A DNA stretch of 64,000 nt from Octopus sinensis (lineage: Eukaryota). The stretch's first letter is position 1, and every line of letters begins with the position of its first letter. A program made the position numbers and the translations under genes. Where the stretch lies: positions 58,590,001 to 58,654,000 of the forward strand of contig NC_043010.1 of assembly GCF_006345805.1 (NCBI RefSeq), read 5' to 3'. Below the pieces are notes generated by a model, which did no database searches, was not told the DNA's origin, and saw only the letters and a program-made list of their open reading frames with translations. This document shows positions 521 to 34,351 of the stretch, piece after piece.

Positions 521-530
521 AGTAACTTAC

Positions 531-2951
531 CAATATTGTATTGGGTGGACTCTTCTCCAGGGTACCCACGTTTGACCAATCAATCTGAGACTCATACTGC
601 GGGTAGAAATCTTCCTTACATTCCACAAATGGCATGTTTCTATTATTCATCTCTGAAGAGTACCTCACTGGGGTACCAGGAATACTGCTGCTCTGACACG
701 GTAAAGGTTGATCAATTCTGTTACATATAGCTGACCTATTAACACCTTTCCTAGTGCTCTTGGCAGAGCGAGACTGACCACTGCTACATTTCACAATACA
801 CAGTGTGATCGACACTACAATCACCACAGCTACTATTACAGCTGCTACTACAAGGATAATCAATAATGGTACGTCCAGTGTTCTGTTCTTCTCTAAGTGG
901 ACAGTCGGCATCGGTGCTGATGTCTTGTTAGTGACCCTTAATGACAAAGACACAGTAGTTGTGGCTGACAACACTGGGCTTCCAGAATCCTTGACCACAA
1001 GCACCAGTGCGTATGAGCCAGCATCGTTGAGATGAGGTGCACGCGAGAAAGACATTTGACCAGTTAAAGAGTTGAGTGTAAACAAGCGTTTATTGTTACC
1101 GTCAAGTATTCCATATTTGAGGAACGCATTTAAATGACTGTCTCTGTCAGACGCTCTAATCACAGTGATGGCATTGGTACTTTGCGGGTGGTAGTGGACA
1201 TTGATATGGAAAGGGTCAGTTGTAGGGTAGATGAAATACGGATTATTGTCGTTTCTGTCTAAAACCTCAACAACAACATTCGCTGTGTTATTCAACGACG
1301 GTTTACCATTGTCTTTGACAAAAACCTCAAACTTATACATGTCTTCTTCTTCTCTGTCCAATGGTATGTTGCTGGTAATAAAACCATAATCACTCACCTG
1401 GAACGGTATGTTATTTCTGTCTTTACTCAACAGTGAGAACGTCAGTTGACCAGCACTTGCCAGGTCTGGGTCAGTGGCATTGATAAAACCTATAGGAAAG
1501 TTTGCTTTACCATTCTCATAGGTGAGGAAGTGGAATGTATCTTTGGTAAATTGCGGTTGCACATCATTCACATCCATTACTTGGATTGAGATCTTTCTCT
1601 CCGTCTTTAAAGCAGGGCTTCCATTGTCTTCACACACAATTCTCATGTTGAAATGGTCTAATGTTTCTCTGTCAAGTGGTTTCTTCAGAGTAATCTTGTA
1701 TTCCTTTGATCCTAAATGTGAGAGGACAACTTTATCATGTTCTAATTTACAACTCACTTCTCCATTCGCTCCAAAATCATTGTCCACCACATTCACATAA
1801 GCAAGAAAACTGCCCACTTTAGTTCCTTCGTAAATCGCTGCAGTGTCCTTCTTCAATTCAGACACAAAATTGATCCCTATTTTGGGAGGATGGTTCTTTT
1901 CATTGAGAATATTCACTCGTACAATGGCAAAGGAATTTAAAGAAGGATTCCCTCCATCTTTCGCCTCCACATACATCTTGAGAATATTCTTTGTTTGTGA
2001 TAATGGTTTTTCTACAAATAATTCCCCAGTTTGTTGGTTCAGTCTGAAATGTCTTCTTGTACGTTCTGGTGTTTCCGGACTAAAGAAATAAGACACTTTA
2101 CCATTGTTGCCAGAATCTGGGTCTTTTGCAGACAATGTCAAAATGGGGTTGTTGTTAGGATGTGTATTTTTGATGGAAATATTGTAAATATGTTTTGAAA
2201 AAATCGGTGAGTTATCATTCACATCAATTATTTTTATATGAACATGTAAAATTCCTTCTTTTGAAGGCTGCCCTCCATCATTAGCTATCACTTCTAGATT
2301 GTAACTATCTTTGATTTCTCTGTCTAGTTTTTCTCCAAGAATAATTCCTATCTTTGCTCTTCCTGTGATGGTTTTTCTCACAGACAATATAAATGGATCA
2401 CTAAATTGTTTCTTCAATTTATATGTAATTTCTGAATTTTCCATTCCAACATCTTTGTCAAAGGCATCTGGAATTAATCTTTCGGCTCCTTCTCCATCAC
2501 GTTCATCAAATGTAATATTCAGTTGTGTCTGAGCAAACTCAGGGCTGTGATCATTAATGTCTTCTATAATAACCTGAATTTTAATAATTTTCAAAAATGT
2601 CTTCCTTCTACGTACAGCAACTTTGATGTATCTAACACACTCTGATTCATATGTACACAGTTTCTCAGCATCCAATGTTTGAGCCGTGTACAATTTACCA
2701 TCTTGTGTGACGTTGAATAAATGTGAATTCTCTGTCCATTGCTGTTGCATTTGGTTGTATGTGATGAAATTATTTCCCACAAGAGAGTCCGTTTCTTCCA
2801 TCTGTGTGTCAGCAGCAATATCCCCAACAAAAGTAAAGGGACTGCTTTCTTCTTCTACATGATAGCTCAGATCTACACAGACACAACTGTGTAGTAATAG
2901 ATTGAGGACATTTGCAAGTAAGTATGTATTCCACACACAGCCTACTTCCAT
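531..2951 (-). CDS. Protocadherin A, main coding exon (807 codons: signal peptide, EC1-EC6, TM, cytoplasmic tail)
   Basis: ORF track 516..2954. The first true ATG is at 2951 (the track's first codon is GTG). Cadherin motifs DINDHSPEF, LDRE, DVNDNSP, DxD; EC1 Cys-X5-Cys (CTYESEC) typical of protocadherins; TM LLIILVVAAVIVAVVIVVSITLCIV. Acceptor TTTCAG| at 2984; phase-0 donor TTG|GTAAGT at 531/530. Confidence 0.96.
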
Positions 2952-6179: not shown

Positions 6180-6223
<44 letters not shown>

Positions 6224-7089
6224 ATTATATATATTTACACAAGACAATTAATCACCAAATGACTCTGTATCACAGCAAAATGTCTGCTGCTATTCACAAT
6301 ATACAACAATGTGTCCAACAAATGGCTATCATTATTAATATTATTATTATTTTCAATATTACTAATCCACACACACCACAGAAGAAAAAAAAGATCCACT
6401 TGTATTTCTATGTCTTGTTGTCTTCACTTTGACACTAAAATATATTTTCCACAACAAATTGCTCACACAATCCCTCAAACAACCATGTCTGACATCAGAA
6501 CGATATCTGCTACTCTGTGATTATAGATTCATTATGAAGACCTCCTTCGTTAAATCGTTTCTATAAATGCTTTTAGAACATCATTTATACATTGTGATAT
6601 GATAAAATGAATAGAGAAATATTAAGTAAGAAATATTTCTGGGAATATAATGATATATTGTTAGAGTGTCTGCAGGAAATCTACAAATGAAATAATCTGG
6701 CTAAAGAGAAGAGACAGAATGTTGTGAAGACAAAATGGAGATTTCCTGTGAGAAATGAGATTTAGTGAGACAAACTTTGCATCTAATTTCACCGAACCAA
6801 CAACATAGGAGACTAAAACAATAACAATTATTATAAACTCTATCAATATAGAACCAGAATATTTGTGAGATGACACTGGATTATTAAATAATCTAATAAT
6901 AATAATAATAATAATAGTTAGTATTTTGCCCAGTGAAGTTGTATGTTGTGAGTAAAACATTTGCTGATATTTGTGAGTGATATAAGGGTGTTTCTCTGAA
7001 TGTCCCTTTGTTTTCTCTGTCTCTTATATATTTTCACATGATATTAAAGAGGAAAGATGGGAAATGAAAGAAGATAGATGTAGACTTAC

Positions 7090-7325
7090 CTCCATTGTCT
7101 CATCCATAATCAGTGTGGCAGTGTGTGAGGGAGTGTCTAGTGGTGTGTCACTCTGTGTGTGTGTGTGTGGTAGTAGAGATGTGGATCTCAGGCTGTAACT
7201 ACTGCTGCTGTTGTTTCTGCTGCTGTAGTCTGCTGCACACACACACACACACACACTGCTTCTACACACATACTGCAGTGATGTGTGTGTGTCATAAGAG
7301 CTGTGTATAGACTGTGTGCTGTGTA
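7090..7325 (-). other. Putative 5' leader exon of gene A
   Basis: Block conserved in all four units, ending in a strong donor GAG|GTAAGT (7090/7089). The 5' end is estimated as ~30 nt downstream of a TATAAA. Confidence 0.7.
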
Positions 7326-7351
7326 AATATACACAGTTTGTAGTTCTATGG

Positions 7352-7357
7352 TTTATA
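7352..7357 (-). promoter_or_regulatory. TATA-like box upstream of the leader exon (also at 17278-17283 and 26466-26471; absent from unit D)
   Basis: GACTATAAACC on the minus strand at the same position in units A, B and C. The genome is AT-rich, so specificity is low. Confidence 0.4.
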
Positions 7358-7597
7358 GTCTAACAATGGAGTGTTGCAACGATGTGTGATGTGTAGTAAC
7401 TCTATCGGTTGTGTTGGGACACAAGTTAATGTGTTGTTGTATATAGATATACAATAGAGGATACGTTTATCGTTTGTTTAAAAACATGATTGTATGTAAA
7501 TATTTATGTATATTTATGTATGGTTGCATGTGGCTAGTGTTTATTCTCCCTACCTGCCAGATTGTCAGACTGTTTTACTTTTTGCTACCCTCTAAGA

Positions 7598-7657
<60 letters not shown>

Positions 7658-7859
7658 ATGTATGTATGTGTATATTTATATATTATAAAATATATTTAGC
7701 ATTTCTCAAAATATATTTACATAAATATCAATATCCTGATCATTATGTTCATGATTGGATAAGTTAATGAGTTATTCAAAGTTTTGCTCCAGTGTGGACT
7801 GTTCAATTCAGGGTCTAATATCTGAGTAGTCTGAGAAGTTTTGTATATGCATAAATCAA

Positions 7860-7860: not shown

Positions 7861-7907
<47 letters not shown>

Positions 7908-7913
7908 TGTATA

Positions 7914-7954
<41 letters not shown>

Positions 7955-7974
7955 TGTATATAAATATGTATATG

Positions 7975-8047
<73 letters not shown>

Positions 8048-8072
8048 TATGTATATTATATATATATATATG

Positions 8073-8104
<32 letters not shown>

Positions 8105-8108
8105 TATA

Positions 8109-8142
<34 letters not shown>

Positions 8143-8238
8143 GTAGATGGATATATAAAGATACACATGAATGTATGCATGTAAGTATATGTGCATATAT
8201 GTAAGTTATATATATATGTATGTATATTTTTATATATT

Positions 8239-8283
<45 letters not shown>

Positions 8284-8403
8284 GTATGTATATTTTTATA
8301 TATTTGCATATATATATATATAAATATGTATATAAATATGTATATAAATATGTATATAAATATGTATATAAATATGTATATGTATATATATATATAAATA
8401 TGT

Positions 8404-8434
<31 letters not shown>

Positions 8435-8464
8435 AATATATACATTATCATATATGTATATATA

Positions 8465-8524
<60 letters not shown>

Positions 8525-8525: not shown

Positions 8526-9008
8526 TACATGGAGTTGTATCCATAGCTGTACATATAACTGTATGTATGCACATTAATGTGTGTGTGTGTGTGTGTGTGT
8601 AAATATTTATATATAGAGAGAGAGGTGGGGAGATGTGAACCTTAGAGAGAAGACAGCAAAGGAATGCAACAAATTGTGTGATATAGAGTTGAATGGGTTC
8701 AAGCCTAGCTAGGAATGTATAGGAAAAACTGGATATTAGCACAGGGATAAAGTGTGTTTGTGTATACACATAGGGTGAAAATTTGTATGAATGTGTTAAT
8801 GTGTCTTTCTGTGTGTGCATTGATGTAATGTGTGTAGGTGTGTGTATACAAGTACAGTCTTATGTGTGTCTGTGTTTGTGATTCTTGTGTGTGCTGTTAA
8901 GAATGTGTCCATCAAATATTCCACTATGGTAAGATGGTAAGATCCTCACAGAATATTCCAGAGTCTGTCTGTGTAACAATATCTTTTTTCCTTGGCAGAA
9001 ATGTGGTT

Positions 9009-9032
9009 TTATTTTTTAATTCTTGTTGGTAA
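9009..9032 (-). CDS. Putative terminal coding exon of gene B (LPTRIKK*)
   Basis: Strong acceptor ctctttctctctttctttctccattccag| at 9032. Phase 0 matches the upstream donor and gives TTA CCA ACA AGA ATT AAA AAA TAA. The same block follows genes C and D. Confidence 0.6.
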   Translation of the reverse strand, partial: LPTRIKK

Positions 9033-10159
9033 CTGGAATGGAGAAAGAAAGAGAGAAAGAGTTTAACAGAACATTGATTAAAGTATGTCACCTCAAATGT
9101 ATGCCAGACAATATATCTGACAGCTTTCATGGTGACCCAATGTATTAGAGGCCTTTGTCTTGTCTTTAAAGTACATCGGTTGGAGGGGGCCTTCTTCAGA
9201 AGTTCCAGTTCTGAGAAGTGTGGGACACTTTCTTAGCCTCTATTGTTACCAGATCTGCTCTGACCCCAGGTAGTAGCACCCACTGAAATTTTAGCATTTC
9301 ATGGAATGGCATCGAGATAATTTACAGACATCATAACAAGCCCAGGGCAGATGAAACCCTTCAGCTTTTTAGCAGGTCGTCTAAGAGAAGGTAAATCCAG
9401 ACAAATCCTGCATCCTGCTAACTACTGGACCCCTGGATTTTGTTACATCAGATCAATACAAGTTTGGAGGACAGGAGAATGGGACGGGCTCTGCACAAAC
9501 CATGCACACAATAACAATAACACCCTGGTGCATTGTGGGGTGATTTATTGATCCTTTAAACATGGCTAAGAGAGTAAACCCCTACAAAACATCCAGAGGG
9601 AGGGACACTAAGGCACTTATATACAAATATACCAAAAGCTGGCATCCACTTTGGTTCCATTGATGCAGCAAATTTATTGACATGTCTGTTCTTCATAGCT
9701 GGCATCGATGAGTGGATAGGTGAGAAATATGGTTCGGACAAGACGCATTTTATTCTGGAAACAGCTGATGCGCAGAAGAGGTGGCTACTCACTTCAGAAT
9801 ACCGTTGACCAATAATGAAAATATTGTAGTTACGTGTGAGCTATGTAAGACTATATATCTGACCAATCTATGGCATGGATTCTGTGTAATCAAACGTATG
9901 ACTGGGAATATATCTGATCAAAATATTCACCAATGTATGACATATCATGTTTGACCAAAGAATTGGCAAGCAGCATATCAGCCCATTGTATGACAGACAT
10001 TATGACGGACCAATGTATGACACAGATTATAGAAACAATCTTACGCTCCCTTTTCCCTACTCATGTTCAACATGACCATAAACACCAATCCCACTAACAT
10101 TTAATAAATGAAGGGACTTCACACTATGTGATGGTCCCTTATCTTTCATGTTTCACTAG

Positions 10160-11190: not shown

Positions 11191-13614
11191 CAATATAGTA
11201 TTGGGTGGACTCTTCTCTAGGGTACCCACGTTTGACCAATCAATCTGAGACTCATACTGCGGGTAGAAATCTTCCTTACATTCCACAAATGGCATGTTTC
11301 TATTATTCATCTCTGAAGAGTACCTCACTGGGGTACCAGGAATACTGCTGCTCTGACACGGTAAAGGTTGATCAATTCTGTTACATATAGCTGACCTATT
11401 AACACCTTTCCTAGTGCTCTTGGCAGAGCGAGACTGACCACTGCTACATTTCACAATACACAGTGTGATCGACACTACAATCACCACAGCTACTATTACA
11501 GCTGCTACTACAAGGATAATCAATAATGGTACGTCCAGTGTTCTGTTCTTCTCTAAGTGGACAGTCGGCATCGGTGCTGATGTCTTGTTAGTGACCCTTA
11601 ATGACAAAGACACAGTAGTTGTGGCTGACAACACTGGGCTTCCAGAATCCTTGACCACAAGCACCAGTTCGTATGAGCCAGCATCGTTGAGATGAGGTGC
11701 ACGCGAGAAAGACATTTGACCAGTTAAAGAGTTGAGTGTAAACAAGCGTTTATTGTTACCGTCAAGTATTCCATATTTGAGGAACGCATTTAAATGACTG
11801 TCTCTGTCAGACGCTCTAATCACAGTGATGGCATTGGTACTTTGCGGGTGGTAGTGGACATTGATATGGAAAGGGTCAGTTGTAGGGTAGATGAAATACG
11901 GATTATTGTCGTTTCTGTCTAAAACCTCAACAACAACATTCGCTGTGTTATTCAACGACGGTTTACCATTGTCTTTGACGAAAACCTCAAACTTATACAT
12001 GTCTTCTTCTTCTCTGTCCAATGGTATGTTGCTGGTAATAAAACCATAATCACTCACCTGGAACGGTATGTTATTTCTGTCTTTACTCAACAGTGAGAAC
12101 GTCAGTTGACCAGCACTTGCCAGGTCTGGGTCAGTGGCATTGATAAAACCTATAGGAAAGTTTGCTTTACCATTCTCATAGGTGAGGAAGTGGAATGTAT
12201 CTTTGGTAAATTGCGGTTGCACATCATTCACATCCATTACTTGGATTGAGATCTTTCTCTCCGTCTTTAAAGCAGGGCTTCCATTGTCTTCACACACAAT
12301 TCTCATGTTAAAATGGTCTAATTTTTCTCTGTCAAGGGATTTCTTCAGAGTAATCTTGTATTCCTTTGATCCTAAATGTGAGAGGACAACTGTATCATGT
12401 TCTAATTTACAACTCACTTCTCCATTTGCTCCAAAATCATTGTCCACCACATTCACATAAGCTAGATAACTGCCCACTTTTGTCCCTTCGTAAATAGCTG
12501 CAGTGCCCTTCTTCAATTCAGACACAAAATTTATATCAATTTCAGGAGGATGGTTCTTTTCATTGAGAATATTCATCCGTACAATGGCAAAGGAATTTAA
12601 AGAAGGATTCCCTCCATCTTTCGCCTCCACATACATCTTGAGAATATTCTTTGTTTGTGATGTTAATGGTTTTTCTACAAATAATTCTCCAGTTTGTTTG
12701 TTTAGTCTGAAATGTCTTCTTGTACGTTCTGGTGTTTCCGGACTAAAAAAATAAGACACTTTACCATTATTGCCAGAATCTGGGTCTTTTGCAGACAATG
12801 TCAAAATAGGGTTGTTGTTAGGATGTGTATTTTTGATGGAAATATTGTAAATATGTTTTGAAAAAACTGGTGAGTTATCATTCACATCAATTATTTTTAT
12901 ATGAACATGTAGAATTCCTTGTTTTGAAGGTTGCCCTCCATCATTAGCTATCACTTCTAGATTGTAACTATCTTTGATTTCTCTGTCTAGTTTGTCTCCA
13001 AGAATAATTCCTATCTTTGCTCTTCCGGTTATAGTTTTCTTCACAGACAATATAAATGGATCACTAAATTGTTTCTTCAATTTGTATGTAACTTCTGAAT
13101 TTTCCATTCCAACATCTCTATCAATGGCATCTGGAATTAATCTTTCGGCTCCTTCACGATCTTCCTCATTAAATATAATTTCTACATCTGGTTGAGGAAA
13201 CTCAGGGCTGTGATCATTAATGTCTTCTATAATTACTTTAATTTTAATAACTTTCAAAAATGTCTTCCTTCTACGTACAGCAACTTTGATATATCTAACA
13301 CAATCTGATTCATATGTACACAGTTTCTCTGCATCCAATGTTTGAGCCGTGTACAATTTACCATCTTGTGTGACATTAAACAAATGTGAATTTCCTGTTC
13401 TTTGTCTCTGTATTTGGTTGTATGTGATGAAGTTATTTCCCACAAGAGAGTCCGTTTCTTCCATCTGTGTGTCAGCAGCAATATCCCCAACAAAAGTAAA
13501 GGGACTGCTTTCTTCTTCTACATGATAGCTCAGATCTACACAGACACAACTGTGTAGTAATAGATTGAGGACATTTGCAAGTAAGTATGTATTCCACACA
13601 CAGCCTACTTCCAT
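11191..13614 (-). CDS. Protocadherin B, main coding exon (808 codons)
   Basis: ORF track 11023..13617; same architecture as A. ATG 13614, acceptor 13647, donor TTG|GTAAGT at 11191/11190. The Thr-rich extension in the ORF track is intron read-through. Confidence 0.96.
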
Positions 13615-15706: not shown

Positions 15707-16999
15707 TATATATGTAGGTGTGTGTGTATTTATATAGTTAGTAGTCTCACAGATATAGTTTTGGAGAATTAATGTATACACTCACTTCTAAACACTATAC
15801 ACAGTAAATATACATTCTGTACGGCAGACTATTCAACAAATTTACAAATTTCAAAAGAGAATAACTCCAAACATACAGTTTGTGATTCACTAACAAATAT
15901 ATAATTAGTGAAAGATAATGACGAGTGTATATAAGAAATTGAAGAACAACAGAAAGAAAAGGCTTCAACAAGCAAGATTTCTCATCATTATATAGCCATG
16001 TTTAAAAATATATACACCAGTGATTATACACAAAATTAACAATATACAACATATTGCTCATGCTGAAATTTTAATATATACACTGTACAATATCTTAAAC
16101 TATATATACAAACAAAAACGAAACACAGATATATGTGTATATTTATATAAGAAATTTAATCAGTAAATAACACTCCATCACAGCAAAATGTCTGCTGCTA
16201 TTGACACTATACAACAATGTGTCCAAGAAATGGCTATCATTATTAATATTATTATTATTATTTTCAATATTACTAATCCACACACACCACAGAAAAAAAA
16301 GATCCACTTGTATTTCTATGTCTTGTTGTCTTCACTTTGACACTAAAATATATTTTCCACAACAAATTGCTCACACAATCCCTCAGACAACCATGTCTGA
16401 CATCAGAACGATATCTGCTACTCTGTGATTATAGATTCATTATGAAGACCTCCTTCGTTAAATCGTTTCTATAAATGCTTTTAGAACATCATTTATACAT
16501 TGTGATATGACAAAATGAATAGAGAAATATTAAGTAAGAAATATTTCTGGGAATATAATGATATGTTGTTAGAGTGTCTGCAGGAAATCTACAAATGAAA
16601 TAATCTGGCTAAAGAGAAGAGACGGAATGTTGTGAAGACAAAATGGAGATTTCCTGTGAGAAATGAGATTTAGTGAGACAAACTTTGCATCTAATTTCAC
16701 CTAACCAACAACATAGGAGACTAAAACAATAACAATTATTATAAACTCTATCAATATAGAACCAGAATATTTGTGAGATGACACTGGATTATTAAATAAT
16801 CTAATAATAATAATAATAATAATAGTTAGTATTTTGCCCAGTGAAGTTGTATTTTGTGAGTAAAACCTCTGCTGATATTTGTGAGTGATATAAGGGTGTT
16901 TCTCTGAATGTCCCTTTGGTTTTCTCTTGTCTCTTATATATTTTCACATGATATTAAAGAGGAAAGATGGGAAATGAAAGAAGATAGATGTAGACTTAC

Positions 17000-17144
17000 C
17001 TCCATTGTCTCATCCATAATCAGTGTGGCAGTGTGTGAGGGAGTGTCTAGTGGTGTGTCACTCTGTGTGTGTGTGTGTGTGGTAGTAGAGATGTGGATCT
17101 CAGGCTGTAACTACTGCTGCTGTTGTTTCTGCTGCTGTAGTCTG

Positions 17145-17183
<39 letters not shown>

Positions 17184-17250
17184 TTCTACACATATACTGC
17201 AGTGATGTGTGTGTGTGTCATAAGAGCTGTGTATAGACTGTGTGCTGTGT
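17000..17250 (-). other. Putative 5' leader exon of gene B
   Basis: Homologous to 7090-7325; donor GAG|GTAAGT at 17000/16999. Confidence 0.7.
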
Positions 17251-18820
17251 AAATATACACAGTTTGTAGTTCTATGGTTTATAGTCTAACAATGGAGTGT
17301 TGTAACGATGTGTGATGTGTAGTAACTCTATCGGTTGTGTTGGGACACAAGTTAGTGTGTTGTTGTATATAGATATACAATAGAGGATACGTTTATCGTG
17401 TGTTTAAAAACATGATTGTATGTAAATATTTATATATGTATATTTATGTATGGTTGCATGTGGCTAGTCTTTAGTCACCTGCCTGATGGTTTGTCTCTCT
17501 TTTTACCTCTTGGCTGCCCTCTGACAGATTATACTTTATACACACACACACACGCACACTTATTATATCTGTATACATTTTTATATAAATATATTTATAT
17601 ATATATTATATCTGTGTATATGTGAGTATATCTACAATGTGTATGTGTGTATATACATATATTTCTATATATATATTATATCTGTATACAGATATATATA
17701 AATATATACATTATCATATATGTATATATATATATATATATGTGTGTTTTTATATATATATATATATATATATCATCATCATCATCAGCTAACAGCCAGG
17801 TGATAACTATTTCATATGCTTTGATGAATTATTAGACTATCAGAATATTTATCAGCATTTAAGTAGGGGATATTGTGAGAGACTGGTTTTGGGGGATAGC
17901 TGGGCATTGGTTTTTGTGTCTCAACACCCACCAATTGAATGAAGCACAATCAATAGTAGACGAGTGTATCCTGAGTACATTGTAGCCAGAAGAAAACTAC
18001 AGTAAAAGAAGGTCAGGTCTCTTTTAACCCTGCTGGCAACAAAAGTAATCTCACTGCAAATGATGTGTAGATTGCTTGTTAGTCTTGTATTACAAAAAAA
18101 AGTACTGCTTAGCAATAAGACAAAGGTATTGAATGTTAAACATTCAGATGTAGAATTTGGTAAGAAAGGAAGCAAGTAATGCCCACTTTCTTGTGTAATT
18201 TTGGTGAGTATTGAGCAAGAAGAGAGAGATTAGATGAAAGGAAACCTGGCTAAAGGAATATCAGGTGTAGTACAGAAACGGGGAGGTAGGGGCTAGGTGT
18301 TTGGTAGAAATGACATGGGTGTGGTTGTGTAGATCTGAGATGTAAATGGATGGTTGCAGTTGAGTAAGGATGTCGTTGGAGGAACTGGAAGGAGTCTCAG
18401 GGAGAGGAAATCCAAGAGAGACAGAGGGAGATGGGAACCTTAGAGAGAAGACAGCAAAGGAATGCAACAAATTGTGTGATATAGAGTTGAATGGGTTCAA
18501 GCCTAGCTGGGAATGTATAGGAAAAAATGGATATTAGCACGGGGATAAAGTGTGTTTGTGTATACACATAGGGTGAAAATTTGTATGAATGTGTTAATGT
18601 GTCTTTCTGTGTGTGCATTGATGTAATGTGTGTAGGTGTGTGTGTACAACTACAATCTTATGTGTGTCCGTGTTTGTGATTCTAGTGTGTGTGTTTGTGT
18701 GTGTGTTGTTAAGAATGTGTCCATCAAATATTCCACTATGGTAAGATGGTAAGATCCTCACAGAATATTCCAGAGTCTGTCTGTGTAACAATATCTTTTT
18801 TCCTTGGCAGAAATGTGGTT

Positions 18821-18844
18821 TTATTTTTTAATTCTTGTTGGTAA
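18821..18844 (-). CDS. Putative terminal coding exon of gene C (LPTRIKK*)
   Basis: Same polypyrimidine-CAG acceptor and codons as 9009-9032. Confidence 0.55.
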   Translation of the reverse strand, partial: LPTRIKK

Positions 18845-19295
18845 CTGGAATGGAGAAAGAAAGAGAGAAAGAGTTTAACAGAACATTGAATCAAGTATGT
18901 CACCTCAAATGTATGCCAGACAATATATCTGACAGCTATCATGGTGACCCAATATATTAGAGGCCTTTAAAGTGCATCGGTTGGAGGGGGCCTTCTTCAG
19001 AAGTTCCAGTTTTGAGAAGTGTGGGACTATTTCTTAGCCTCTATTGCTACCAGATCTACTTTGACCCCAGGTAGTAGCACCCACCTAACTCATGGTCATG
19101 GGTTAATTAGCATTTCATGGAATGGCATCGAGATAATTTACAGACATCATAACAAGCCCAGGGCAGATGAAACCCTTCAACTCTTTAGCAGGTCGTCTAA
19201 GAGAAGGTAAATCCAGATAAATCCTGCTAAGTACTGGGCTCATGCGATTTGTTTCACCAGATCAAGACACAAAGATACACACTCATTAATATATA

Positions 19296-20870: not shown

Positions 20871-23293
20871 CAATATTGTATTGGGTGGACTCTTCTCCAG
20901 GGTACCCACGTTTGACCAATCAATCTGAGACTCATACTGCGGGTAGAAATCTTCCTTACATTCCACAAATGGCATGTTTCTATTATTCATCTCTGAAGAG
21001 TACCTCACTGGGGTACCAGGAATACTGCTGCTCTGACACGGTAAAGGTTGATCAATTCTGTTACATATAGCTGACCTATTAACACCTTTCCTAGCGTTCT
21101 TGGCAGAGCGAGACTGACCACTGCTACATTTCACAATACACAGTGTGATCGACACTACAATCACCACAGCTACTATTACAGCTGCTACTACAAGGATAAT
21201 CAATAATGGTACGTCCAGTGTTCTGTTCTTCTCTAAGTGGACAGTCGGCATCGGTGCTGATGTCTTGTTAGTGACCCTTAATGACAAAGACACAGTAGTT
21301 GTGGCTGACAACACTGGGCTTCCAGAATCCTTGACCACAAGCACCAGTTCGTATGAGCCAGCATCATTGAGATGAGGTGCACGCGAGAAAGACATTTGAC
21401 CAGTTAAAGAGTTGAGTGTAAACAAGCGTTTATTGTTACCGTCAAGTATTCCATATTTGAGGAACGCATTTAAATGACTGTCGCTGTCAGACGCTCTAAT
21501 CACAGTGATGGCATTGGTACTTTGCGGGTGGTAGTGGACATTGATATGGAAAGGGTCAGTTGTAGGGTAGATGAAATACGGATTATTGTCGTTTCTGTCT
21601 AAAACCTCAACAACAACATTCGCTGTGTTATTCAACGACGGTTTACCATTGTCTTTGACAAAAACCTCAAACTTATACATGTCTTCTTCTTCTCTGTCCA
21701 ATGGTATGTTGCTGGTAATAAAACCATAATCACTCACCTGGAACGGTATGTTATTTCTGTCTTTACTCAACAGTGAGAACGTCAGTTGACCAGCACTTGC
21801 CAGGTCTGGGTCAGTGGCATTGATAAAACCTATAGGAAAGTTTGCTTTACCATTCTCATAGGTGAGGAAGTGGAATGTATCTTTGGTAAATTGCGGTTGC
21901 ACATCATTCACATCCATTACTTGGATTGAGATCTTTCTCTCCATCTTTAAAGCAGGGCTTCCATTGTCTTCACACACAATTCTCATGTTAAAATGGTCTA
22001 ATGTTTCTCTGTCAAGTGGTTTCTTCAGAGTAATCTTGTATTCCTTTGATCCTAAATGTGAGAGGACAACTTTATCATGTTCTAATTTACAACTCACTTC
22101 TCCATTTGCTCCAAATCATTGTCCACCACATTCACATAAGCTAGATAACTGCCCACTTTAGTTCCTTCATAAATAGCTGCAGTGTCCTTCTTCAATTCAG
22201 ACACAAAATTGATCCCTATTTTGGGGGGATGGTTCTTTTCATTGAGAATATTCACCCGTACAATGGCAAAGGAATTTAAAGAAGGATTCCCACCATCTTT
22301 CGCCTCCACATACATCTTGAGAATATTCTTTGTTTGTGATGTTAATGGTTTTTCTACAAATAATTCCCCAGTTTGTTGGTTCAGTCTGAAATACTGTCTT
22401 GTGCGTTCTGGTGTTTTTGAACTAAAAAAATAAGACACTTTACCATTATTGCCAGAATCTGGGTCTTTTGCAGACAATGTCAAAATAGGGTTGTTGTTAG
22501 GATGTGTATTTTTGATGGAAATATTGTAAATATGTTGTGAAAAAACTGGTGAGTTATCATTCACATCAATTATTTTTATATGAACATGTAAAATTCCTTG
22601 TTTCGAAGGTTGTCCTCCATCATTAGCTATCACTTCTAGATTGTAACTATCTTGTATTTCTCTGTCTAGTTTGTCTCCAAGAATAATTCCTATCTTTGCC
22701 CCTCCAGTGATAGTTTTCCTCACAGACAATATAAATGGATCGCTAAATTGTTTCTTTAATTTATATGTAATTTCAGAGTTTTCCATTCCAACATCTTTGT
22801 CAAAGGCATCTGGAATTAATTCTTCAGCACCTTCTCCATCACGCTCATCAAATGTCATATTTATTTCTTTTTGAGGAAACTCAGGGCTGTGATCATTAAT
22901 GTCTTCTATAATTACTTTAATTTTAATAACTTTCAAAAATGTCTTCCTTCTATGTACAGCAACTTTGATGTATCTAACACATTCTGATTCGTATGTACAC
23001 AGTTTCTCAGCATCCAATGTTTGAGCCGTGTACAATTTACCATCTTGTGTGACATTGAATAAATGTGAATTCTCTGTCCATTGCTGTTGCATTTGGTTGT
23101 ATGTGATGAAGTTATTTCCCACAAGAGAGTCCGTTTCTTCCATCTGTGTGTCAGCAGCAATATCCCCAACAAAAGTAAAGGGACTGCTTTCTTCTTCTAC
23201 ATGATAGCTCAGATCTACACAGACACAACTGTGTAGTAATAGATTGAGGACATTTGCAAGTAAGTATGTATTCCACACACAGCCTACTTCCAT
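20871..23293 (-). pseudogene. Protocadherin C with a single 1-nt frameshift (recent pseudogene or assembly error)
   Basis: Split ORFs 22094..23296 and 20697..22097. The ATG-to-donor span is 2423 nt versus 2424 in B and D. ccaaatc at ~22111-22117 corresponds to ccaaaatc in the other copies. No other stop or frameshift; splice sites intact (23326, 20871). Confidence 0.9.
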
Positions 23294-25299: not shown

Positions 25300-25354
<55 letters not shown>

Positions 25355-26205
25355 CCACAAGAAATTTAATCACCAATGACTCTGTATCACAGCAAAATGT
25401 CTGCTGCTATTCACAATATACAACAATGTGTCTAACGAATGGCTATCATTATTAATATTATTATTATTTTGAACATTACTAATCCACACACACCACAGAA
25501 AAAAAAGATCCACTTGTATTTCTATGTCTTGTTGTCTTCACTTTGACACTAAAATATATTTTCCACAATAAATTGCTCACACAATCCCTCAAACAACCAT
25601 GTCTGACATCAGAACGATATCTGCTACTCTGTGATTATAGATTCATTATGAAGACCTCCTTCGTTAAATCGTTTCTATAAATGCTTTTAGAACATCATTT
25701 ATACATTGTGATATGATAAAATGAATAGAGAAATATTAAGTAAGAAATATTTCTGGGAATATAATGATATATTGTTAGAGTGTCTGCAGGAAATCTACAA
25801 ATGAAATAATCTGGCTAAAGAGAAGAGACGGAATGTTGTGAAGACAAAATGGAGATTTCCTGTGATAAATGAGATTTAGTGAGACAAACTTTGCATCTAA
25901 TTTCACCGAACCAACAACATAGGAGACTAAAACAATAACAATTATTATAAACTCTATCAATATAGAACCAGAATATTTGTGAGATGACACTGGATTATTA
26001 AATAATCTAATAATAATAATAATAATAATAGTTAGTATTTTGCCCAGTGAAGTTGTATGTTGTGAGTAAAACATTTGCTGATATTTGTGAGTGATATAAG
26101 GGTGTTTCTCTGAATGTCCCTTTGGTTTTCTCTTGTCTCTTATATATTTTCACATGATATTAAAGAGGAAAGATGGGAAATGAAAGAAGATAGATGTAGA
26201 CTTAC

Positions 26206-26440
26206 CTCCATTGTCTCATCCATAATCAGTGTGGCAGTGTGTGAGGGAGTGTCTAGTGGTGTGTCACTCTGTGTGTGTGTGTGGTAGTAGAGATGTGGAT
26301 CTCAGGCTGTAACTACTGCTGCTGTTGTTTCTGCTGCTGTAGTCTGCTGCACACACACACACACACACACTGCTTCTACACATATACTGCAGTGATGTGT
26401 GTGTGTCATAAGAGCTGTGTATAGACTGTGTGCTGTGTAA
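26206..26440 (-). other. Putative 5' leader exon of gene C
   Basis: Homologous block; donor GAG|GTAAGT at 26206/26205. Confidence 0.7.
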
Positions 26441-27962
26441 ATATACACAGTTTGTAGTTCTATGGTTTATAGTCTAACAATGGAGTGTTGTGTAATGCTG
26501 GTGTATTGTAACGATGTGTGATGTGTAGTAACTCTATCGGTTGTGTTGGGAAACGAGTTAGTGTGTTGTTGTATTTAGATATACAATAGAGGATACGTAT
26601 ATGTTGTGTTTAAAAACTTGATTGTATGTAAATATTTATATATGTATATTTATGTATGGTTGCATGTGGCTAGTCTTTAGTCACCTGCCTGATGGTTTGT
26701 CTCTCTTTTTACCTCTTGGCTTCCCTCTGACAGATTATACTTTATACACACACACACATACTATATCTGTATACAGATATATATGAATATATATATTATC
26801 ATATCTATATATATATATGTGTGTGTGTTTGTGTGTATAGATATATATACATACATATATGTATGTATATATATTTATGTGTGTGTGTCTGTGTGTGTGT
26901 ATAGATATATATATATATATATATATATCATCATCATCAGCTAACAGCCTGTGATAACTATATCGTATGCTTTGATGAATTATTAGACTATCAGAATTTT
27001 TATCAGCATTTAAGTAGGGGATATTGTGAGAGACTGGTTTTGGGGGATAGCTGGGCATTGGTTTTTGTGTCTCAACACCCACCAATTGAATGAAGCACAA
27101 TCAATTGTAGACGAGTGTGTCCTGAGTGCATTGTAGCCAGAAGAAAACTACAGTAAAAGAAGGTCAGGGTTCTTTTATCCCTGCTGGCAACAAAAGTAAT
27201 CTCACTGCAAATGATGTGTAGATTGCTTGTTAGTCTTGTATTACAAAAAACAAGTACTGCTTAGCAATAAGACAAAGGTATTGAATGTTGAACATTCAGA
27301 TGTAGAAGTTGGTAAGAAAGGAAGCAAGTAATCCCCACTTTCTTGTGTAATTTTGGTGAGTATTGAGCAAGAAGAGAGAGATTAGATGAAAGGAAACCTG
27401 GCTAAAGGAATATCAGGTGTAGTACAGAAACGGGGAGTTAGGGGCTAGGTGTTTAGTAGAAATGACATGGGTGTGGTTGTGTAGATCTGAGATGTAAATG
27501 GATGGTTGCAGTTGAGTAAGGATGTCGTTGGAGGAACTGGAAGGAGTCTGGGGGAGAGGAAATCCAAGAGAGACAGAGGGAGATGGGAACCTTAGAGAGA
27601 AGACAGCAAAGGAACGCAACAAATTGTGTGATATAGAGTTGAATGGGTTCAAGCCTAGCTGGGAATGTATAGGAAAAACTGGATATTAGCATGGGGATAA
27701 AGTGTGTTTGTGTGTGTATACACATAGGGTGAAAATTTGTATGAATGTGTTAATGTGTCTTTCTGTGTGTGCATTGATGTAATGTGTGTAGGTGTGTGTG
27801 TACTACTACAGTCTTATGTGTGTCTGTGTTTGTGATTCTAGTGTGTGCTGTTAAGAATGTGTCCATCAAATATTCCACTATGGTAAGATGGTAAGATCCT
27901 CACAGAATATTCCAGAGTCTGTCTGTGTAACAATATCTTTTTTCCTTGGCAGAAATGTGGTT

Positions 27963-27986
27963 TTACTTTTTAATTCTTGTTGGTAA
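27963..27986 (-). CDS. Putative terminal coding exon of gene D (LPTRIKK*)
   Basis: Same acceptor. Its one substitution (AAA to AAG) is synonymous in the phase-0 frame. Confidence 0.6.
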   Translation of the reverse strand, partial: LPTRIKK

Positions 27987-28617
27987 CTGGAATGGAGAAA
28001 GAAAGAGAGAAAGAGTTTAACAGAACATTGAATCAAGTATGTCACCTCAAATGTATGCCAGACAATATATCTGACAGCTTTCATGGTGACCCAATGTATT
28101 AGAGGCCTTTGTCTTGTCTTGAAAGTACATCGGTTAGAGGGGGCCTTCTTCAGAAGTTCCAGTTTTGAGAAGTGTGGGACTATTTCTTAGCCTCTATTGT
28201 TACCAGATCTACTCTGACCCCAGGTAGTAGCACCCACCTAAATTTTGATCATGGGTTAATTAGCATTTCATGGAATGGCATCGAGATAATTTACAGACAT
28301 CATAACAAGCCCAGGGCAGATGAAACCCTTCAGCTCTTTAGCAGGTCGTCTAAGAGAAGGTAAATCCAGATAAATCCTGCTAACTACTGGGCTCATGCGA
28401 TTTGTTTCACCAGATCAAGACACAAAGATGCACACATATTAATATATACATACATATAAAAGGGGGCTTCTCTCAGTTTCTTTCAACCAAATCTACTCAC
28501 AAGTCTTTGGTCGACTCAAGTCTATAGTAGTAGATAGTTCTCCAAGGTGACATGCAATGGATGTAGTGGCTGTGGTGGTGGTGTTAATGAGGTGTTTTTT
28601 TGTAAAATTATACTTAC

Positions 28618-31041
28618 CAATATTGTATTGGGTGGACTCTTTTCCAAGGAACCCACGTTTGACCAATCAATCTGAGACTCATACTGCGGGTAGAAATCTT
28701 CCTTACATTCCACAAATGGCATGTTTCTATTATTCATCTCTGAAGAGTACCTCACTGGGGTACCAGGAATACTGCTGCTCTGACACGGTAATGGTTGATC
28801 AATTCTGTTACATATAGCTGACCTATTAACACCTTTCCTAGTGTTCTTGGCAGAGCGAGACTGACCACTGCTACATTTCACAATACACAGTGTGATCGAC
28901 ACTACAATCACCACAGCTACTATTACAGCTGCTACTACAAGGATAATCAATAATGGTACGTCCAGTGTTCTGTTCTTCTCTAAGTGGACAGTCGGCATCG
29001 GTGCTGATGTCTTGTTAGTGACCCTTAATGACAAAGACACAGTAGTTGTGGCTGACAACACTGGGCTTCCAGAATCCTTGACCACAAGCACCAGTTCGTA
29101 TGAGCCAGCATCATTGAGATGAGGTGCACGCGAGAAAGACATTTGACCAGTTAAAGAGTTGAGTGTAAACAAGCGTTTATTGTTACCGTCAAGTATTCCA
29201 TATTTGAGGAACGCATTTAAATGACTGTCTCTGTCAGACGCTCTAATCACAGTGATGGCATTGGTACTTTGCGGGTGGTAGTGGACATTGATATGGAAAG
29301 GGTCAGTTGTAGGGTAGATGAAATACGGATTATTGTCGTTTCTGTCTAAAACCTCAACAACAACATTCGCTGTGTTATTCAACGACGGTTTACCATTGTC
29401 TTTGACAAAAACCTCAAACTTATACATGTCTTCTTCTTCTCTGTCCAATGGTATGTTGCTGGTAATAAAACCATAATCACTCACCTGGAACGGTATGTTA
29501 TTTCTGTCTTTACTCAACAGTGAGAACGTCAATTGACCAGCACTTGCCAGGTCTGGGTCAGTGGCATTGATAAAACCTATAGGAAAGTTTGCTTTACCAT
29601 TCTCATAGGTGAGGAAGTGGAATGTATCTTTGGTAAATTGCGGTTGCACATCATTCACATCCATTACTTGGATTGAGATCTTTCTCTCCGTCTTCAAAGC
29701 AGGGCTTCCATTGTCTTCACACACAATTCTCATGTTAAAATGGTCTAATTTTTCTCTGTCAAGTGGTTTCTTCAGAGTAATCTTGTATTCCTTTGATCCT
29801 AAATGTGAGAGGACAACTTTATCATGTTCTAATTTACAACTCACTTCTCCATTTGCTCCAAAATCATTGTCCACCACATTCACATAAGCAAGATAACTGC
29901 CCACTTTAGTTCCTTCGTAAATAGCTGCAGTGTCCTTCTTCAATTCAGACACAAAATTGATCCCTATTTTGGGGGGATGGTTCTTTTCATTGAGAATATT
30001 CACCCGTACAATGGCAAAGGAATTTAAGGATGGATTCCCACCATCTTTGGCCTCCACATACATCTTGAGAATATTCTTTGTTTGTGATGTTAATGGTTTT
30101 TCTACAAATAATTCCCCAGTCTGTTGGTTCAGTCTGAAATGTCTTCTTGTGCGTTCTGGTGTTTTTGAACTCATAAAATAAGACACTTTACCATTATTGC
30201 CAGAATCTGGGTCTTTTGCAGACAATGTCAAAATAGGGTTGTTGTTAGGATGTGTATTTTTGATGGAAATATTGTAAATATGTTTTGAAAAAACTGGTGA
30301 GTTATCATTCACATCAATTATTTTTATATGAACATGTAGAATTCCTTGTTTTGAAGGTTGTCCTCCATCATTAGCTATCACTTCTAGATTGTAACTATCT
30401 TGTATTTCTCTGTCTAGTTTGTCTCCAAGAACAATTCCTATCTTTGCCCCTCCAGTGATAGTTTTCCTCACAGACAATATAAATGGATCACTAAATTGTT
30501 TCTTCAATTTGTATGTAACTTCTGAGTTTTCCATTCCAACATCTTTGTCGAAGGCTTCGGGAATTAATCTTTCGGCTCCTTCTCCATCATCTTCATCATA
30601 TGTAATATTCAGTTGTGTCTGAGGAAACTCAGGGCTGTGATCGTTAATGTCTTCTATAATTACTTTAATTTTAATAATTTTCAAAAATGTCTTCCTTCTA
30701 TGTACAGCAACTTTGATGTATCTAACACACTCTGATTCATATGTACACAGTTTCTCAGCATCCAATGTTTGAGCCGTGTACAATTTACCATCTTGTGTGA
30801 CATTGAATAAATGTGAATTCTCTGTCCATTGCTGTTGCATTTGGTTGTATGTGATGAAGTTATTTCCCACAAGAGAGTCCGTTTCTTCCATCTGTGTGTC
30901 AGCAGCAATATCCCCAACAAAAGTAAAGGGACTGCTTTCTTCTTCTACATGATAGCTCAGATCTACACAGACACAACTGTGTAGTAATAGATTGAGGACA
31001 TTTGCAAGTAAGTATGTATTCCACACACAGCCTACTTCCAT
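28618..31041 (-). CDS. Protocadherin D, main coding exon (808 codons)
   Basis: ORF track 28522..31044; ATG 31041, acceptor 31074, donor TTG|GTAAGT at 28618/28617. Confidence 0.96.
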
Positions 31042-33719: not shown

Positions 33720-33877
33720 CTCCATTGTCTCATCCATAATCAGTGTGACAGTGTGTGAGGGAGTGTCTAGTGGTGTGTCACTCTGTGTGTGTGCGTGTGT
33801 GGTAGTAGAGATGTGGATCTCAGGCTGTAACTACTGCTGCTGTTGTTTCTGCTGCTGTAGTCTGCTGCACACACACA
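33720..33877 (-). other. Leader exon of gene D; homology to the other units ends at the (CA)n tract
   Basis: Donor GAG|GTAAGT at 33720/33719. Beyond ctgctgcacacacaca the sequence no longer matches A, B or C. Confidence 0.7.
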
Positions 33878-34046
33878 TTCACAGTGCTACTATACTCTAC
33901 TGAAATAGACGGTAGTCAGGTGCCACGAGAGTTAGTTTTAGGCTGTGTTGTGTGTAGGCATTAATTTGTTATGCGGTTAGTTTGAATTTCTTCTGAGTAG
34001 ATTGTGTGTAATATGCATATATATATATATGTATGTATGTATGTAT

Positions 34047-34270: not shown

Positions 34271-34329
<59 letters not shown>

Positions 34330-34351
34330 TGTGTATGTGTGTGTATATATA

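What the first reader, a model, noticed from the sequence alone, without database searches (positions are those of the whole stretch)
1800..2760. Variation is confined to EC1-EC3, with a hypervariable start of EC2, while EC4 to the tail is homogenised
After DHSPEF the four copies read AQTQLNITFDERDG, PQPDVEIIFNEEDR, PQKEINMTFDERDG and PQTQLNITYDEDDG, with further changes in EC1 (MQQQWTE vs IQRQRTG) and EC3. By eye, A and B differ at only about 4-5 sites over ~1.1 kb from EC5 to the donor. EC2 differs even at synonymous sites (cctgtgatggtt vs ccggttatagtt), so the contrast is not only amino-acid selection. Known: vertebrate clustered Pcdhs set homophilic specificity through EC2/EC3 and show gene conversion in other domains. 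Inference: convergent evolution of a variable recognition surface on a converted scaffold.
Basis: partly seen in the sequence, partly recalled or inferred. Interest (0 to 1): 0.75.

Follow-up and report, generated by a model that had tools for sequence, protein, structure and literature searches.

The report
Octopus protocadherin array: patchwise gene conversion
Four neighbouring octopus protocadherin (neuronal cell-adhesion) genes are kept almost identical at both ends by copying between copies, while a middle part centred on a 20-codon stretch at the start of the second cadherin domain stays different, the same pattern known from vertebrate protocadherin clusters.

Summary
The window, most probably Octopus sinensis, holds four head-to-tail protocadherin genes on the minus strand. 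Of 136 variable sites in the 2.4-kb exon 1, 117 lie in codons 61-421 (EC1 to early EC4). Codons 1-60 are identical and codons 422-807 nearly so. Synonymous divergence is about 0.18 in the middle, 0.02 at the 3' end and 0 at the 5' end, while dN/dS is about 0.2 in both variable parts. The contrast is therefore homogenisation, not protein-level selection alone.

Comparison with 8 Octopus vulgaris and 5 Argonauta hians copies shows concerted evolution. EC5-tail dS is at most 0.04 within each genome but 0.3-0.7 between genera. One old copy type (V13/H5) groups across genera in EC1 and EC3 but with its own genus in EC2-start and EC4-tail.

The first 20 codons of EC2 (strand A plus AB loop) are the densest hotspot. 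They occur as about six types conserved between the two Octopus genomes, and one type was swapped into copy B. dN/dS there is 0.3-0.7, so positive selection is not shown.

Each gene has its own exon 2, unlike the vertebrate clusters. A role in recognition is inferred, not tested. I rate it a new variant of a known kind.

The parts
531..2951 (-). Copy A, exon 1 (807 codons): signal peptide, EC1-EC6, transmembrane segment and short cytoplasmic part. The donor GTAAGT is at 525-530.
   Evidence: ORF; Pfam Cadherin x5 plus Cadherin_2; PDB protocadherin hits; coordinates checked. Residues 326-807 are identical to O. sinensis XP_036364983.1.
2772..2951 (-). Fully homogenised 5' block of copy A (codons 1-60). 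The equivalent blocks are at the 5' ends of B, C and D.
   Evidence: No differences among the four copies. Diversity is 0-0.004 within each of three genomes against 0.10 between Octopus and Argonauta.
1689..2771 (-). Variable region of copy A (codons 61-421: rest of EC1, EC2, EC3 and early EC4).
   Evidence: 117 of 136 variable sites; mean dS 0.177, dN 0.034.
2475..2534 (-). EC2-start hypervariable cassette of copy A (codons 140-159, AQTQLNITFDERDGEGAERL). It covers strand A, the AB loop around the invariant Ca-binding Glu150, and the start of strand B.
   Evidence: Densest 60-nt window; dS 0.36, dN 0.24; strand assignment from the AlphaFold2 model, pLDDT 88-94 in this stretch.
531..1688 (-). 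Homogenised 3' region of copy A (codons 422-807: late EC4, EC5, EC6, transmembrane segment, cytoplasmic part).
   Evidence: 19 variable sites in 1158 nt; dS 0.023, against an Octopus-Argonauta dS of 0.3-0.7.
11191..13614 (-). Copy B, exon 1 (808 codons). The cassette is at 13138-13197 and the IQRQRTG segment near 13378-13411. The copy is a mosaic: like O. vulgaris V4 over most of EC1-EC3, but carrying a V9-type EC2 cassette.
20871..23293 (-). Copy C, exon 1. The cassette is at 22817-22876. A 1-bp deletion in a T run (T4 to T3) near 22113-22116 breaks the frame.
   Evidence: The O. vulgaris orthologue V2 differs by 0.37% and is intact.
28618..31041 (-). Copy D, exon 1 (808 codons), the first gene of the array. 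The cassette is at 30565-30624.
   Evidence: It is collinear with O. vulgaris V1.
9009..9032 (-). Coding part of exon 2 of copy B (LPTRIKK plus stop), preceded by the acceptor CATTCCAG. The same exon belongs to C at 18821-18844 and to D at 27963-27986.
   Evidence: Annotated O. vulgaris proteins end ...NTIL|LPTRIKK.
6205..7251 (-). Homogenised non-coding block of the repeat unit. Other copies are at about 16129-17200, 25302-26400 and 32846-33883. A second block surrounds exon 2 at 8615-9460, 18415-19269 and 27567-28422.
   Evidence: K = 0.01-0.05 among units. Present in every O. vulgaris unit examined but not detected in Argonauta.

Best explanation
This is the start of a tandem array of complete two-exon protocadherin genes in an octopus, most probably Octopus sinensis. 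The array evolves by patchwise concerted evolution.

Sequence is repeatedly copied between neighbouring copies, by gene conversion and probably also unequal crossing-over. This keeps several parts nearly identical: the first 60 codons, late EC4 through the cytoplasmic part, and some non-coding blocks of the repeat unit.

In EC1 to early EC4 the copies keep older, different sequence. Exchange does occur there, but as short tracts that shuffle segments between copies instead of erasing the differences.

The sharpest island is a 20-codon cassette at the start of EC2. It exists as about six types, each stable between two Octopus genomes.

Shown here: the divergence profile, the concerted evolution, the mosaic structure and the gene structure.

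Inferred: selection preserves the EC1-EC3 differences because they set binding specificity in an antiparallel EC1-EC4 dimer, as in vertebrate protocadherins. On this view the conserved EC5-EC6, membrane and cytoplasmic parts can be shared by all copies.
For: Divergence profile in the window:
- dS by domain is EC1 0.19, EC2 0.24, EC3 0.15, EC4 0.086, EC5 0.016, EC6 0.008 and TM/cytoplasmic 0.032. dN/dS is 0.19 in the variable part and 0.21 in the homogenised part.

Comparison across genomes:
- O. vulgaris and A. hians show the same profile, while Octopus-Argonauta dS is 0.3-1.0 in every domain. The 3' half is therefore not a region of low mutation.
- V13 and H5 are sisters in EC1 (100% bootstrap) and in the EC3 island (99%), but each groups with its own genus in EC2-start and EC4-tail (100%).
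- DNA upstream of copy A is 96.9% identical to its O. vulgaris orthologue but only 78-84% identical to paralogues. The copies are therefore much older than their 99.5%-identical 3' halves suggest.
- A derived G at nt 1762 is shared by five adjacent O. vulgaris copies only.

Mosaic structure:
- Copy B is mosaic, tracts shorter than 200 nt are shared between pairs (P = 0.002-0.005), and the informative-site topologies form blocks along the exon (P = 0.006).

The EC2 cassette:
- EC2 cassette types pair A-V5, C-V2, D-V1 and B-V9 with 96-100% bootstrap support.
- Seven of the eight codons with three or more residue states lie in codons 142-158.

Other subfamilies and fold:
- In two other octopod subfamilies, at the protein level, EC4-tail is 97-99% identical within a genus. 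In the one subfamily that has members from both genera, this is 89-96% between genera, and EC2-3 is about 65% both within and between genera. In both subfamilies the most variable windows recur at EC2 140-160, EC2 167-200 and EC3 282-325.
- The predicted fold matches delta-2 and clustered protocadherin EC1-4.
Against: - dN/dS in the cassette is 0.34-0.67, below 1, so positive selection is not demonstrated. dS there rests on only about 12 synonymous sites per pair.
- Variable residues are not clearly enriched at the vertebrate trans-interface positions I could list: 3 of 26 at exact positions (not significant), and an odds ratio of 1.9 with P = 0.04 when one position of tolerance is allowed.
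- Most cassette types carry an N-x-T sequon on the exposed face of strand A. If it is glycosylated, direct protein contact there is less likely.
- Within the main group of copies, Octopus and Argonauta sequences form separate clades even in EC1-EC3. Those regions are therefore also turned over, only more slowly, or the copies duplicated separately in each genus.
- No binding or expression data were available.
Confidence: 0.72

Rival explanations
1. The mosaic is neutral. Conversion homogenises wherever the copies are still similar enough. Islands that happened to diverge past the identity needed for recombination then persist by themselves. On this view the EC1-EC3 differences have no role in recognition.
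For: dN/dS stays below 1 everywhere. The unalignable intron start and the upstream DNA show that divergence does bound the converted blocks. Enrichment at interface positions is weak.
Against: The same short stretches are the most variable in three subfamilies and two genera. dN/dS in the cassette is 2-5 times that of its flanks in the Octopus copies. Short tracts do cross the variable region, so recombination is not blocked there. Cassette types are conserved between the two Octopus genomes.
Confidence: 0.2
2. The duplications are very recent and there is no conversion. On this view EC1-EC3 simply evolved faster under positive or relaxed selection.
For: Non-coding blocks of the unit differ by only K = 0.01-0.05.
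Against: The excess divergence is synonymous as much as non-synonymous, with the same dN/dS of about 0.2 in both parts. Trees are incongruent between regions at 99-100% bootstrap. Upstream DNA is 97% identical to the orthologue but 78-84% identical to paralogues. Copy B is a mosaic.
Confidence: 0.03
3. The near-identical 3' halves are an assembly artefact, produced by collapse or consensus polishing of a tandem repeat.
For: Copy C has a homopolymer 1-bp deletion typical of a long-read error. Public gene models in the array are fused or truncated.
Against: The same profile appears in three independent assemblies of three species. Copy-specific differences are reproduced between orthologues: C-V2 differ by 0.37% and D-V1 by 1.2%.
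Confidence: 0.03
4. The 3' half is constrained or mutates slowly, including at synonymous sites, for example because of RNA structure or splicing signals.
For: EC5-EC6 are the most conserved domains at the protein level across subfamilies.
Against: Octopus-Argonauta dS in EC5, EC6 and the tail is 0.70, 0.31 and 0.67, against 0-0.036 within genomes.
Confidence: 0.02

Closest known systems
Vertebrate clustered protocadherins (alpha, beta, gamma): region-restricted gene conversion (Noonan et al. 2004, as summarised in PMC4978886)
   Same: Both are tandem arrays of large exons that encode six EC domains plus the transmembrane segment. In both, dS is highest in EC2/EC3 and lowest in EC5/EC6. The predicted EC1-4 fold is the one that forms antiparallel trans dimers. 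The variable hotspots include the EC2 beta4-beta5 loop and the EC3 Phe-X-Phe loop.
   Different: There are no shared constant exons here: every copy has its own exon 2 and 3' end. The first 60 codons are also homogenised, along with the last few dozen bases upstream of the start codon and non-coding blocks of the unit. The sharpest hotspot is EC2 strand A plus the AB loop, which I could not find named as a vertebrate specificity element. Promoter-choice elements were not examined. The expansion is evolutionarily independent according to the literature.
Cephalopod protocadherin arrays (Albertin et al. 2015 as cited in PMC6339937; Albertin et al. 2022, PMC9068888)
   Same: This is such an array: same-orientation, multi-exon, full-gene duplicates. 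The O. vulgaris counterparts are annotated as protocadherin beta-15-like (CAI9733532-44). Those papers already suggest duplication plus homogenisation by gene conversion.
   Different: In the papers I could read, conversion is only suggested, from whole-gene trees or overall similarity. I found no description of the domain-resolved profile, the trans-genus test, the EC2 cassette or the mosaic exchange.
Multigene families that combine conversion with maintained diversity, such as MHC peptide-binding exons (comparison from general knowledge)
   Same: An island of deeper divergence at the presumed ligand-contact codons is flanked by homogenised sequence. Short-tract exchange shuffles motifs between copies.
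   Different: Here the diversity is between paralogues, not alleles. dN/dS above 1 is not seen, and the ligand is presumably the same protein on another cell.

Membership tests
Protocadherin (cadherin superfamily) | Several extracellular cadherin repeats with Ca-binding linkers, one transmembrane segment, and the ectodomain encoded by one large exon | tested here: met
   Pfam Cadherin x5 plus Cadherin_2. Linker motifs DINDHSPEF, DVNDNSPIF, DVNDVQPQF and DRNDNNPYF are visible in the translation. The exon has 807 uninterrupted codons. The best solved-structure matches are protocadherins.
Cephalopod tandem protocadherin arrays | Same-orientation tandem copies that are complete genes, each with its own terminal exon | tested here: met
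   Four copies lie on the minus strand at a spacing of 7.7-10.7 kb. B, C and D each have their own exon 2. The window is collinear with the annotated O. vulgaris array.
Vertebrate-type clustered protocadherin locus | Variable first exons spliced to a shared set of constant exons | tested here: not met
   The 7-codon exon 2 is repeated behind each copy, at 9009-9032, 18821-18844 and 27963-27986.
Vertebrate-type clustered protocadherin locus | Conserved promoter element with CTCF-dependent stochastic promoter choice | not tested
   I only noted that about 170 bp upstream of each ATG is alignable among the copies. I made no motif or expression analysis.
Concerted evolution by gene conversion | In the converted region, paralogues within a genome are more alike than orthologues between species, while other regions keep the orthologous signal | tested here: met
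   Within-genome dS is 0-0.036 against 0.3-0.7 between genera for EC5-tail. V13+H5 are sisters in EC1 and EC3 but split by genus in EC2-start and EC4-tail.
Concerted evolution by gene conversion | Mosaic tracts and derived changes shared among neighbouring copies | tested here: met
   Copy B is a mosaic. Permutation tests are significant. A derived change at nt 1762 occurs in V1, V2, V4, V5 and V6 only, which is a single site.
Diversifying (positive) selection on a recognition surface | dN/dS above 1 at the variable codons | tested here: not met
   dN/dS in the cassette is 0.67 (window), 0.53 (nine Octopus types) and 0.34 (Argonauta). This is higher than the flanks in the Octopus copies (0.14 and 0.25) but about level in Argonauta (0.30), and it is below 1 in all three. 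I ran no site-model test.
Homophilic antiparallel EC1-EC4 trans dimer with EC2:EC3 specificity | Variable residues lie in the trans interface and determine the binding partner | tested here: inconclusive
   The fold matches. Hotspots coincide with the EC2 beta4-beta5 loop and the EC3 Phe-X-Phe loop named in PMC5001838. Enrichment at the listed positions is weak.

The most novel reading that the evidence does not exclude
The 20-codon EC2-start cassette, together with the EC1 motif and the EC3 loop segments, may act as exchangeable specificity modules. On this reading, short-tract conversion reshuffles them among array members in the germline. New EC1/EC2/EC3 combinations, and so new recognition specificities, would arise on a scaffold that conversion keeps uniform. 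This would be a general way of generating octopod protocadherin diversity, evolved independently of the vertebrate system.
Probability: 0.25. Interest if true: 0.75.

Novelty: new variant of a known kind. Interest (0 to 1): 0.55.

Why it matters
Cephalopods and vertebrates expanded their protocadherins independently, and both have large, complex nervous systems. Nobody has shown what the octopus copies do.

The octopus arrays show the same evolutionary signature as vertebrate clusters: a diverse EC2/EC3 and a homogenised membrane-proximal and cytoplasmic part. This is indirect evidence for the same logic of many specificities on one common signalling and assembly scaffold.

It also makes the idea testable. 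The analysis names the segments to swap: codons 140-159, the EC2 beta4-beta5 loop and the EC3 Phe-X-Phe loop. It also supplies natural near-isogenic pairs, such as copy B against V4, which differ mainly in the cassette.

There is a practical warning too. Whole-gene trees of these families mix two histories, and automatic annotation of the arrays is unreliable.

Tried and rejected
- A GENECONV-style run test on polymorphic sites only cannot see the homogenised 3' half, because that half has almost no polymorphic sites. It was useful only for the short tracts inside the variable region.
- Mapping variable residues onto vertebrate interface positions gave no clear enrichment. I used an alignment to Pcdh-alpha7 and the position numbers quoted in PMC5001838, PMC5106212 and bioRxiv 10.1101/493106. 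That list is partial and the alignment has about 30% identity, so I treat the result as inconclusive.
- I could not read Albertin et al. 2015 or Noonan et al. 2004. Their content is cited only through papers that summarise them.
- Literature searches for a domain-resolved analysis or for binding tests of cephalopod protocadherins found nothing. That is absence from the searchable library only.
- I considered RNA-mediated (cDNA) conversion as a reason for the sharp loss of homology right after the donor. I did not pursue it, because the blocks around exon 2 include intron sequence and are less homogenised (K = 0.02-0.05) than the end of exon 1.
- Dimer modelling was not possible with the tools available.
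Full report
WHAT IS THERE

The window carries four head-to-tail copies of a protocadherin gene on the minus strand. The exon 1 coordinates are:
- A: 531-2951
- B: 11191-13614
- C: 20871-23293
- D: 28618-31041

Each exon 1 encodes a signal peptide, six cadherin repeats, a transmembrane segment and a short cytoplasmic part. This rests on Pfam Cadherin x5 plus Cadherin_2 and on best solved-structure matches to Xenopus Pcdh8.1, Pcdh10, Pcdh-alpha7 and gamma isoforms. Each exon 1 ends in a GTAAGT donor.

Each gene has its own tiny exon 2, encoding LPTRIKK plus a stop codon. These lie at 9009-9032 for B, 18821-18844 for C and 27963-27986 for D; the one for A lies outside the window. These are therefore complete genes, not variable exons feeding a shared constant region. 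That agrees with what is published for cephalopods (PMC9068888).

The source is most probably Octopus sinensis. XP_036364983.1 equals copy A residues 326-807 exactly, and XP_036364984.1 equals copy C residues 1-346 exactly. The window is collinear with the start of a roughly 13-copy array in O. vulgaris (OX597827.1, 81.36-81.50 Mb). Orthologous intergenic DNA there is 95-98.6% identical. In order of transcription, D, C, B and A correspond to V1, V2, V4 and V5.

THE OBSERVATION

Among the four copies, 136 sites of the 2421-nt exon vary. None lies in codons 1-60, 117 lie in codons 61-421, and 19 lie in codons 422-807 (Fisher P = 1e-24; maximum chi-square 107 against a null maximum of 15).

The first 60 nt of EC2 form the densest window, with 24 of 60 sites variable (P = 1e-9).

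Variation continues into roughly the first two thirds of EC4. The 5' end of the exon is as uniform as the tail.

IS IT SELECTION ON THE PROTEIN, OR HOMOGENISATION?

Nei-Gojobori estimates:

| Region | Mean dS | Mean dN | dN/dS |
|---|---|---|---|
| Codons 1-60 | 0 | 0 | - |
| Codons 61-421 | 0.177 | 0.034 | 0.19 |
| Codons 422-807 | 0.023 | 0.005 | 0.21 |

| Domain | Mean dS |
|---|---|
| EC1 | 0.19 |
| EC2 | 0.24 |
| EC3 | 0.15 |
| EC4 | 0.086 |
| EC5 | 0.016 |
| EC6 | 0.008 |
| TM/cytoplasmic | 0.032 |

dN/dS is the same in the variable and the uniform parts. The contrast is therefore one of overall age, not of protein-level selection alone.

PROOF OF CONCERTED EVOLUTION

I fetched eight O. 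vulgaris copies and five Argonauta hians copies.
- All three genomes show the same profile. Within-genome dS in EC5, EC6 and the tail is 0-0.036. Octopus-Argonauta dS in the same domains is 0.70, 0.31 and 0.67, so the region is not mutationally cold.
- One divergent copy type is decisive. O. vulgaris V13 and Argonauta H5 are sisters in EC1 (100% bootstrap) and in an EC3 island (99%). In EC2-start and in EC4-tail, each groups with the other copies of its own genus (100%).
- Within Octopus alone, the DNA upstream of copy A is 96.9% identical to its orthologue V5 but only 78-84% identical to paralogues. The 3' halves of the paralogues, by contrast, differ by about 0.5%.
- A derived G at nt 1762 is shared by five adjacent O. 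vulgaris copies. It is absent from their O. sinensis orthologues and from Argonauta.

These results exclude three alternatives: recent duplication without conversion, a mutational cold spot, and a single-assembly artefact.

THE UNIT IS A PATCHWORK

Some non-coding blocks are homogenised too (K = 0.01-0.05). They lie at 6205-7251 and its equivalents, and around exon 2. The start of intron 1 and the DNA beyond about 170 bp upstream are unalignable between copies. Homology collapses within a few bases of the donor.

INSIDE THE VARIABLE REGION

Exchange also happens here, but as short tracts.
- The informative-site topologies form blocks along the exon: AD|BC at nt 363-449, AC|BD at 450-530 and AB|CD at 591-1064 (P = 0.006). 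Pairs share tracts of 44-186 nt (P = 0.002-0.005).
- Copy B equals O. vulgaris V4 over most of EC1-EC3, with 0 differences in nt 660-900. Its EC2 cassette, however, is of the V9 type.

The cassette covers codons 140-159. It comes in about six types:
- AQTQLNITFDERDG
- P[QE]TQLNITYDEDDG
- PQKEINMTFDERDG
- PQ[ES]EINLTFGERDG
- PQ[PT]DVEIIFNEEDR
- PQKQINVTYDEDDG

The types pair A-V5, D-V1, C-V2 and B-V9 between the two Octopus genomes, with 96-100% bootstrap support. Seven of the eight codons with three or more residue states lie in codons 142-158.

In the cassette, dS is 0.36-0.81 and dN is 0.23-0.27. The resulting dN/dS of 0.34-0.67 is higher than in the flanks for the Octopus copies (0.14-0.25) but about level with the flank value of 0.30 in Argonauta, and it is below 1 in all three. 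The cassette is thus both older and, in Octopus, less constrained than its surroundings. Positive selection is not demonstrated.

STRUCTURE AND LIKELY FUNCTION

An AlphaFold2 model of EC1-4 has a mean pLDDT of 87. It places the cassette on EC2 strand A, the AB loop around the invariant Ca-binding Glu150, and the start of strand B. The model superposes on delta-2 and clustered protocadherin EC1-4 fragments with TM scores of 0.65-0.75. Those vertebrate proteins form antiparallel EC1-EC4 trans dimers in which EC2:EC3 contacts carry much of the specificity (PMC5001838, PMC5106212, PMC7082078).

Other variable clusters fall on two elements named as specificity elements in PMC5001838:
- the EC2 beta4-beta5 loop (residues 192 and 198);
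- the EC3 Phe-X-Phe loop (residues 289-301, which the model predicts to contain a short helix).

Two observations call for caution. A position-by-position comparison with the interface positions I could list was weak: 3 of 26 at exact positions, and an odds ratio of 1.9 with P = 0.04 when one position of tolerance was allowed. Most cassette types also carry an N-x-T sequon. The recognition role is therefore an inference.

GENERALITY

I compared two other octopod protocadherin subfamilies at the protein level. They are about 52% identical to this one.
- EC4 to the tail is 97-99% identical within a genus.
- In the one subfamily with members from both genera, EC4 to the tail is 89-96% identical between genera, and EC2-3 is about 65% identical both within and between genera.
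- In both subfamilies the most variable 20-residue windows recur at 140-160, 167-200, 282-305 and 303-325.

This recurrence argues for a functional cause and against chance islands. Without the DNA I cannot separate constraint from conversion in those families.

COMPARISON WITH WHAT IS KNOWN

The vertebrate pattern is published: highest dS in EC2/EC3, lowest in EC5/EC6, attributed to gene conversion outside EC2-3 (PMC4978886, summarising Noonan et al. 2004).

For cephalopods, the papers I could read only suggest duplication or conversion in general terms (PMC6339937, PMC9068888). I found no domain-resolved analysis and no binding data.

This is therefore an independent instance of a known evolutionary regime, in a differently organised array. 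It has three added features: homogenisation of the 5' end and of non-coding blocks, a discrete EC2-start cassette, and cassette exchange between copies.

VERDICT

I rate it a new variant of a known kind, of moderate interest.

Noticed in passing
window 22113-22116 (- strand, copy C): A 1-bp deletion in a T run (GATTTTGG becomes GATTTGG) splits copy C into two ORFs. The O. vulgaris orthologue V2 is intact, and the O. sinensis RefSeq model for this copy is truncated at 352 aa. It is either a young pseudogene or a homopolymer assembly error.
   Followed up: partly
window 11191-13614 compared with L001/L004 (O. vulgaris V3, V4): The window has one copy (B) where O. vulgaris has two (V3, V4) between the orthologues of C and A. 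This is a copy-number difference between the two genomes, or a collapse in one assembly.
   Followed up: partly
O. vulgaris and O. sinensis proteins P0121 (1571 aa) and P0134 (4660 aa): Public gene models fuse two or more neighbouring array members. P0121 joins the exon-1 donor of V2 to sequence just upstream of the ATG of V3. This is either annotation confusion or real read-through splicing between neighbours. A polypyrimidine-CAG acceptor-like site lies about 34 nt upstream of each ATG in the window.
   Followed up: no
window 6205-7682, 16129-17621, 25302-26849, 32846-33883: A non-coding block of 1.0-1.5 kb in each repeat unit differs by only K = 0.01-0.03 among units. It is present in every O. 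vulgaris unit examined, has no long ORF, and gave no match in the Argonauta loci. Its function is unknown.
   Followed up: partly
window 7863-8523 and 62928-63437; shorter relatives near 17564-17773, 26762-26928, 34271-35075, 49815-50003, 52875-53042, 56097-56334: Long degenerate (AT)n tracts match each other on both strands. One sits in the A-B intergenic region, with shorter relatives between the other copies.
   Followed up: no
window 58875-59871 (+): A G+C-rich tandem repeat with a 61/122/244-bp period and about 4 copies of the 244-bp unit. It produces three overlapping long ORFs on the plus strand (58752-59894) that are almost certainly not genes.
   Followed up: no
window 40981-41802 (-) and 60003-61091 (-): Reverse-transcriptase fragments of retroelements lie upstream of the array. 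The first is a sub-threshold RVT_1 match (28.8 bits against a cut-off of 29.6). The second is RVT_1 plus a sub-threshold PHD-finger match (20.5 bits against a cut-off of 24).
   Followed up: partly
window 525-530 and the intron starts of copies A-D: Homology between copies drops from about 99.5% to unalignable within a few bases of the exon-1 donor. Copy A has a (TCTA/TCTG)n microsatellite there. B and C carry about 1.5 kb of extra sequence compared with D.
   Followed up: partly
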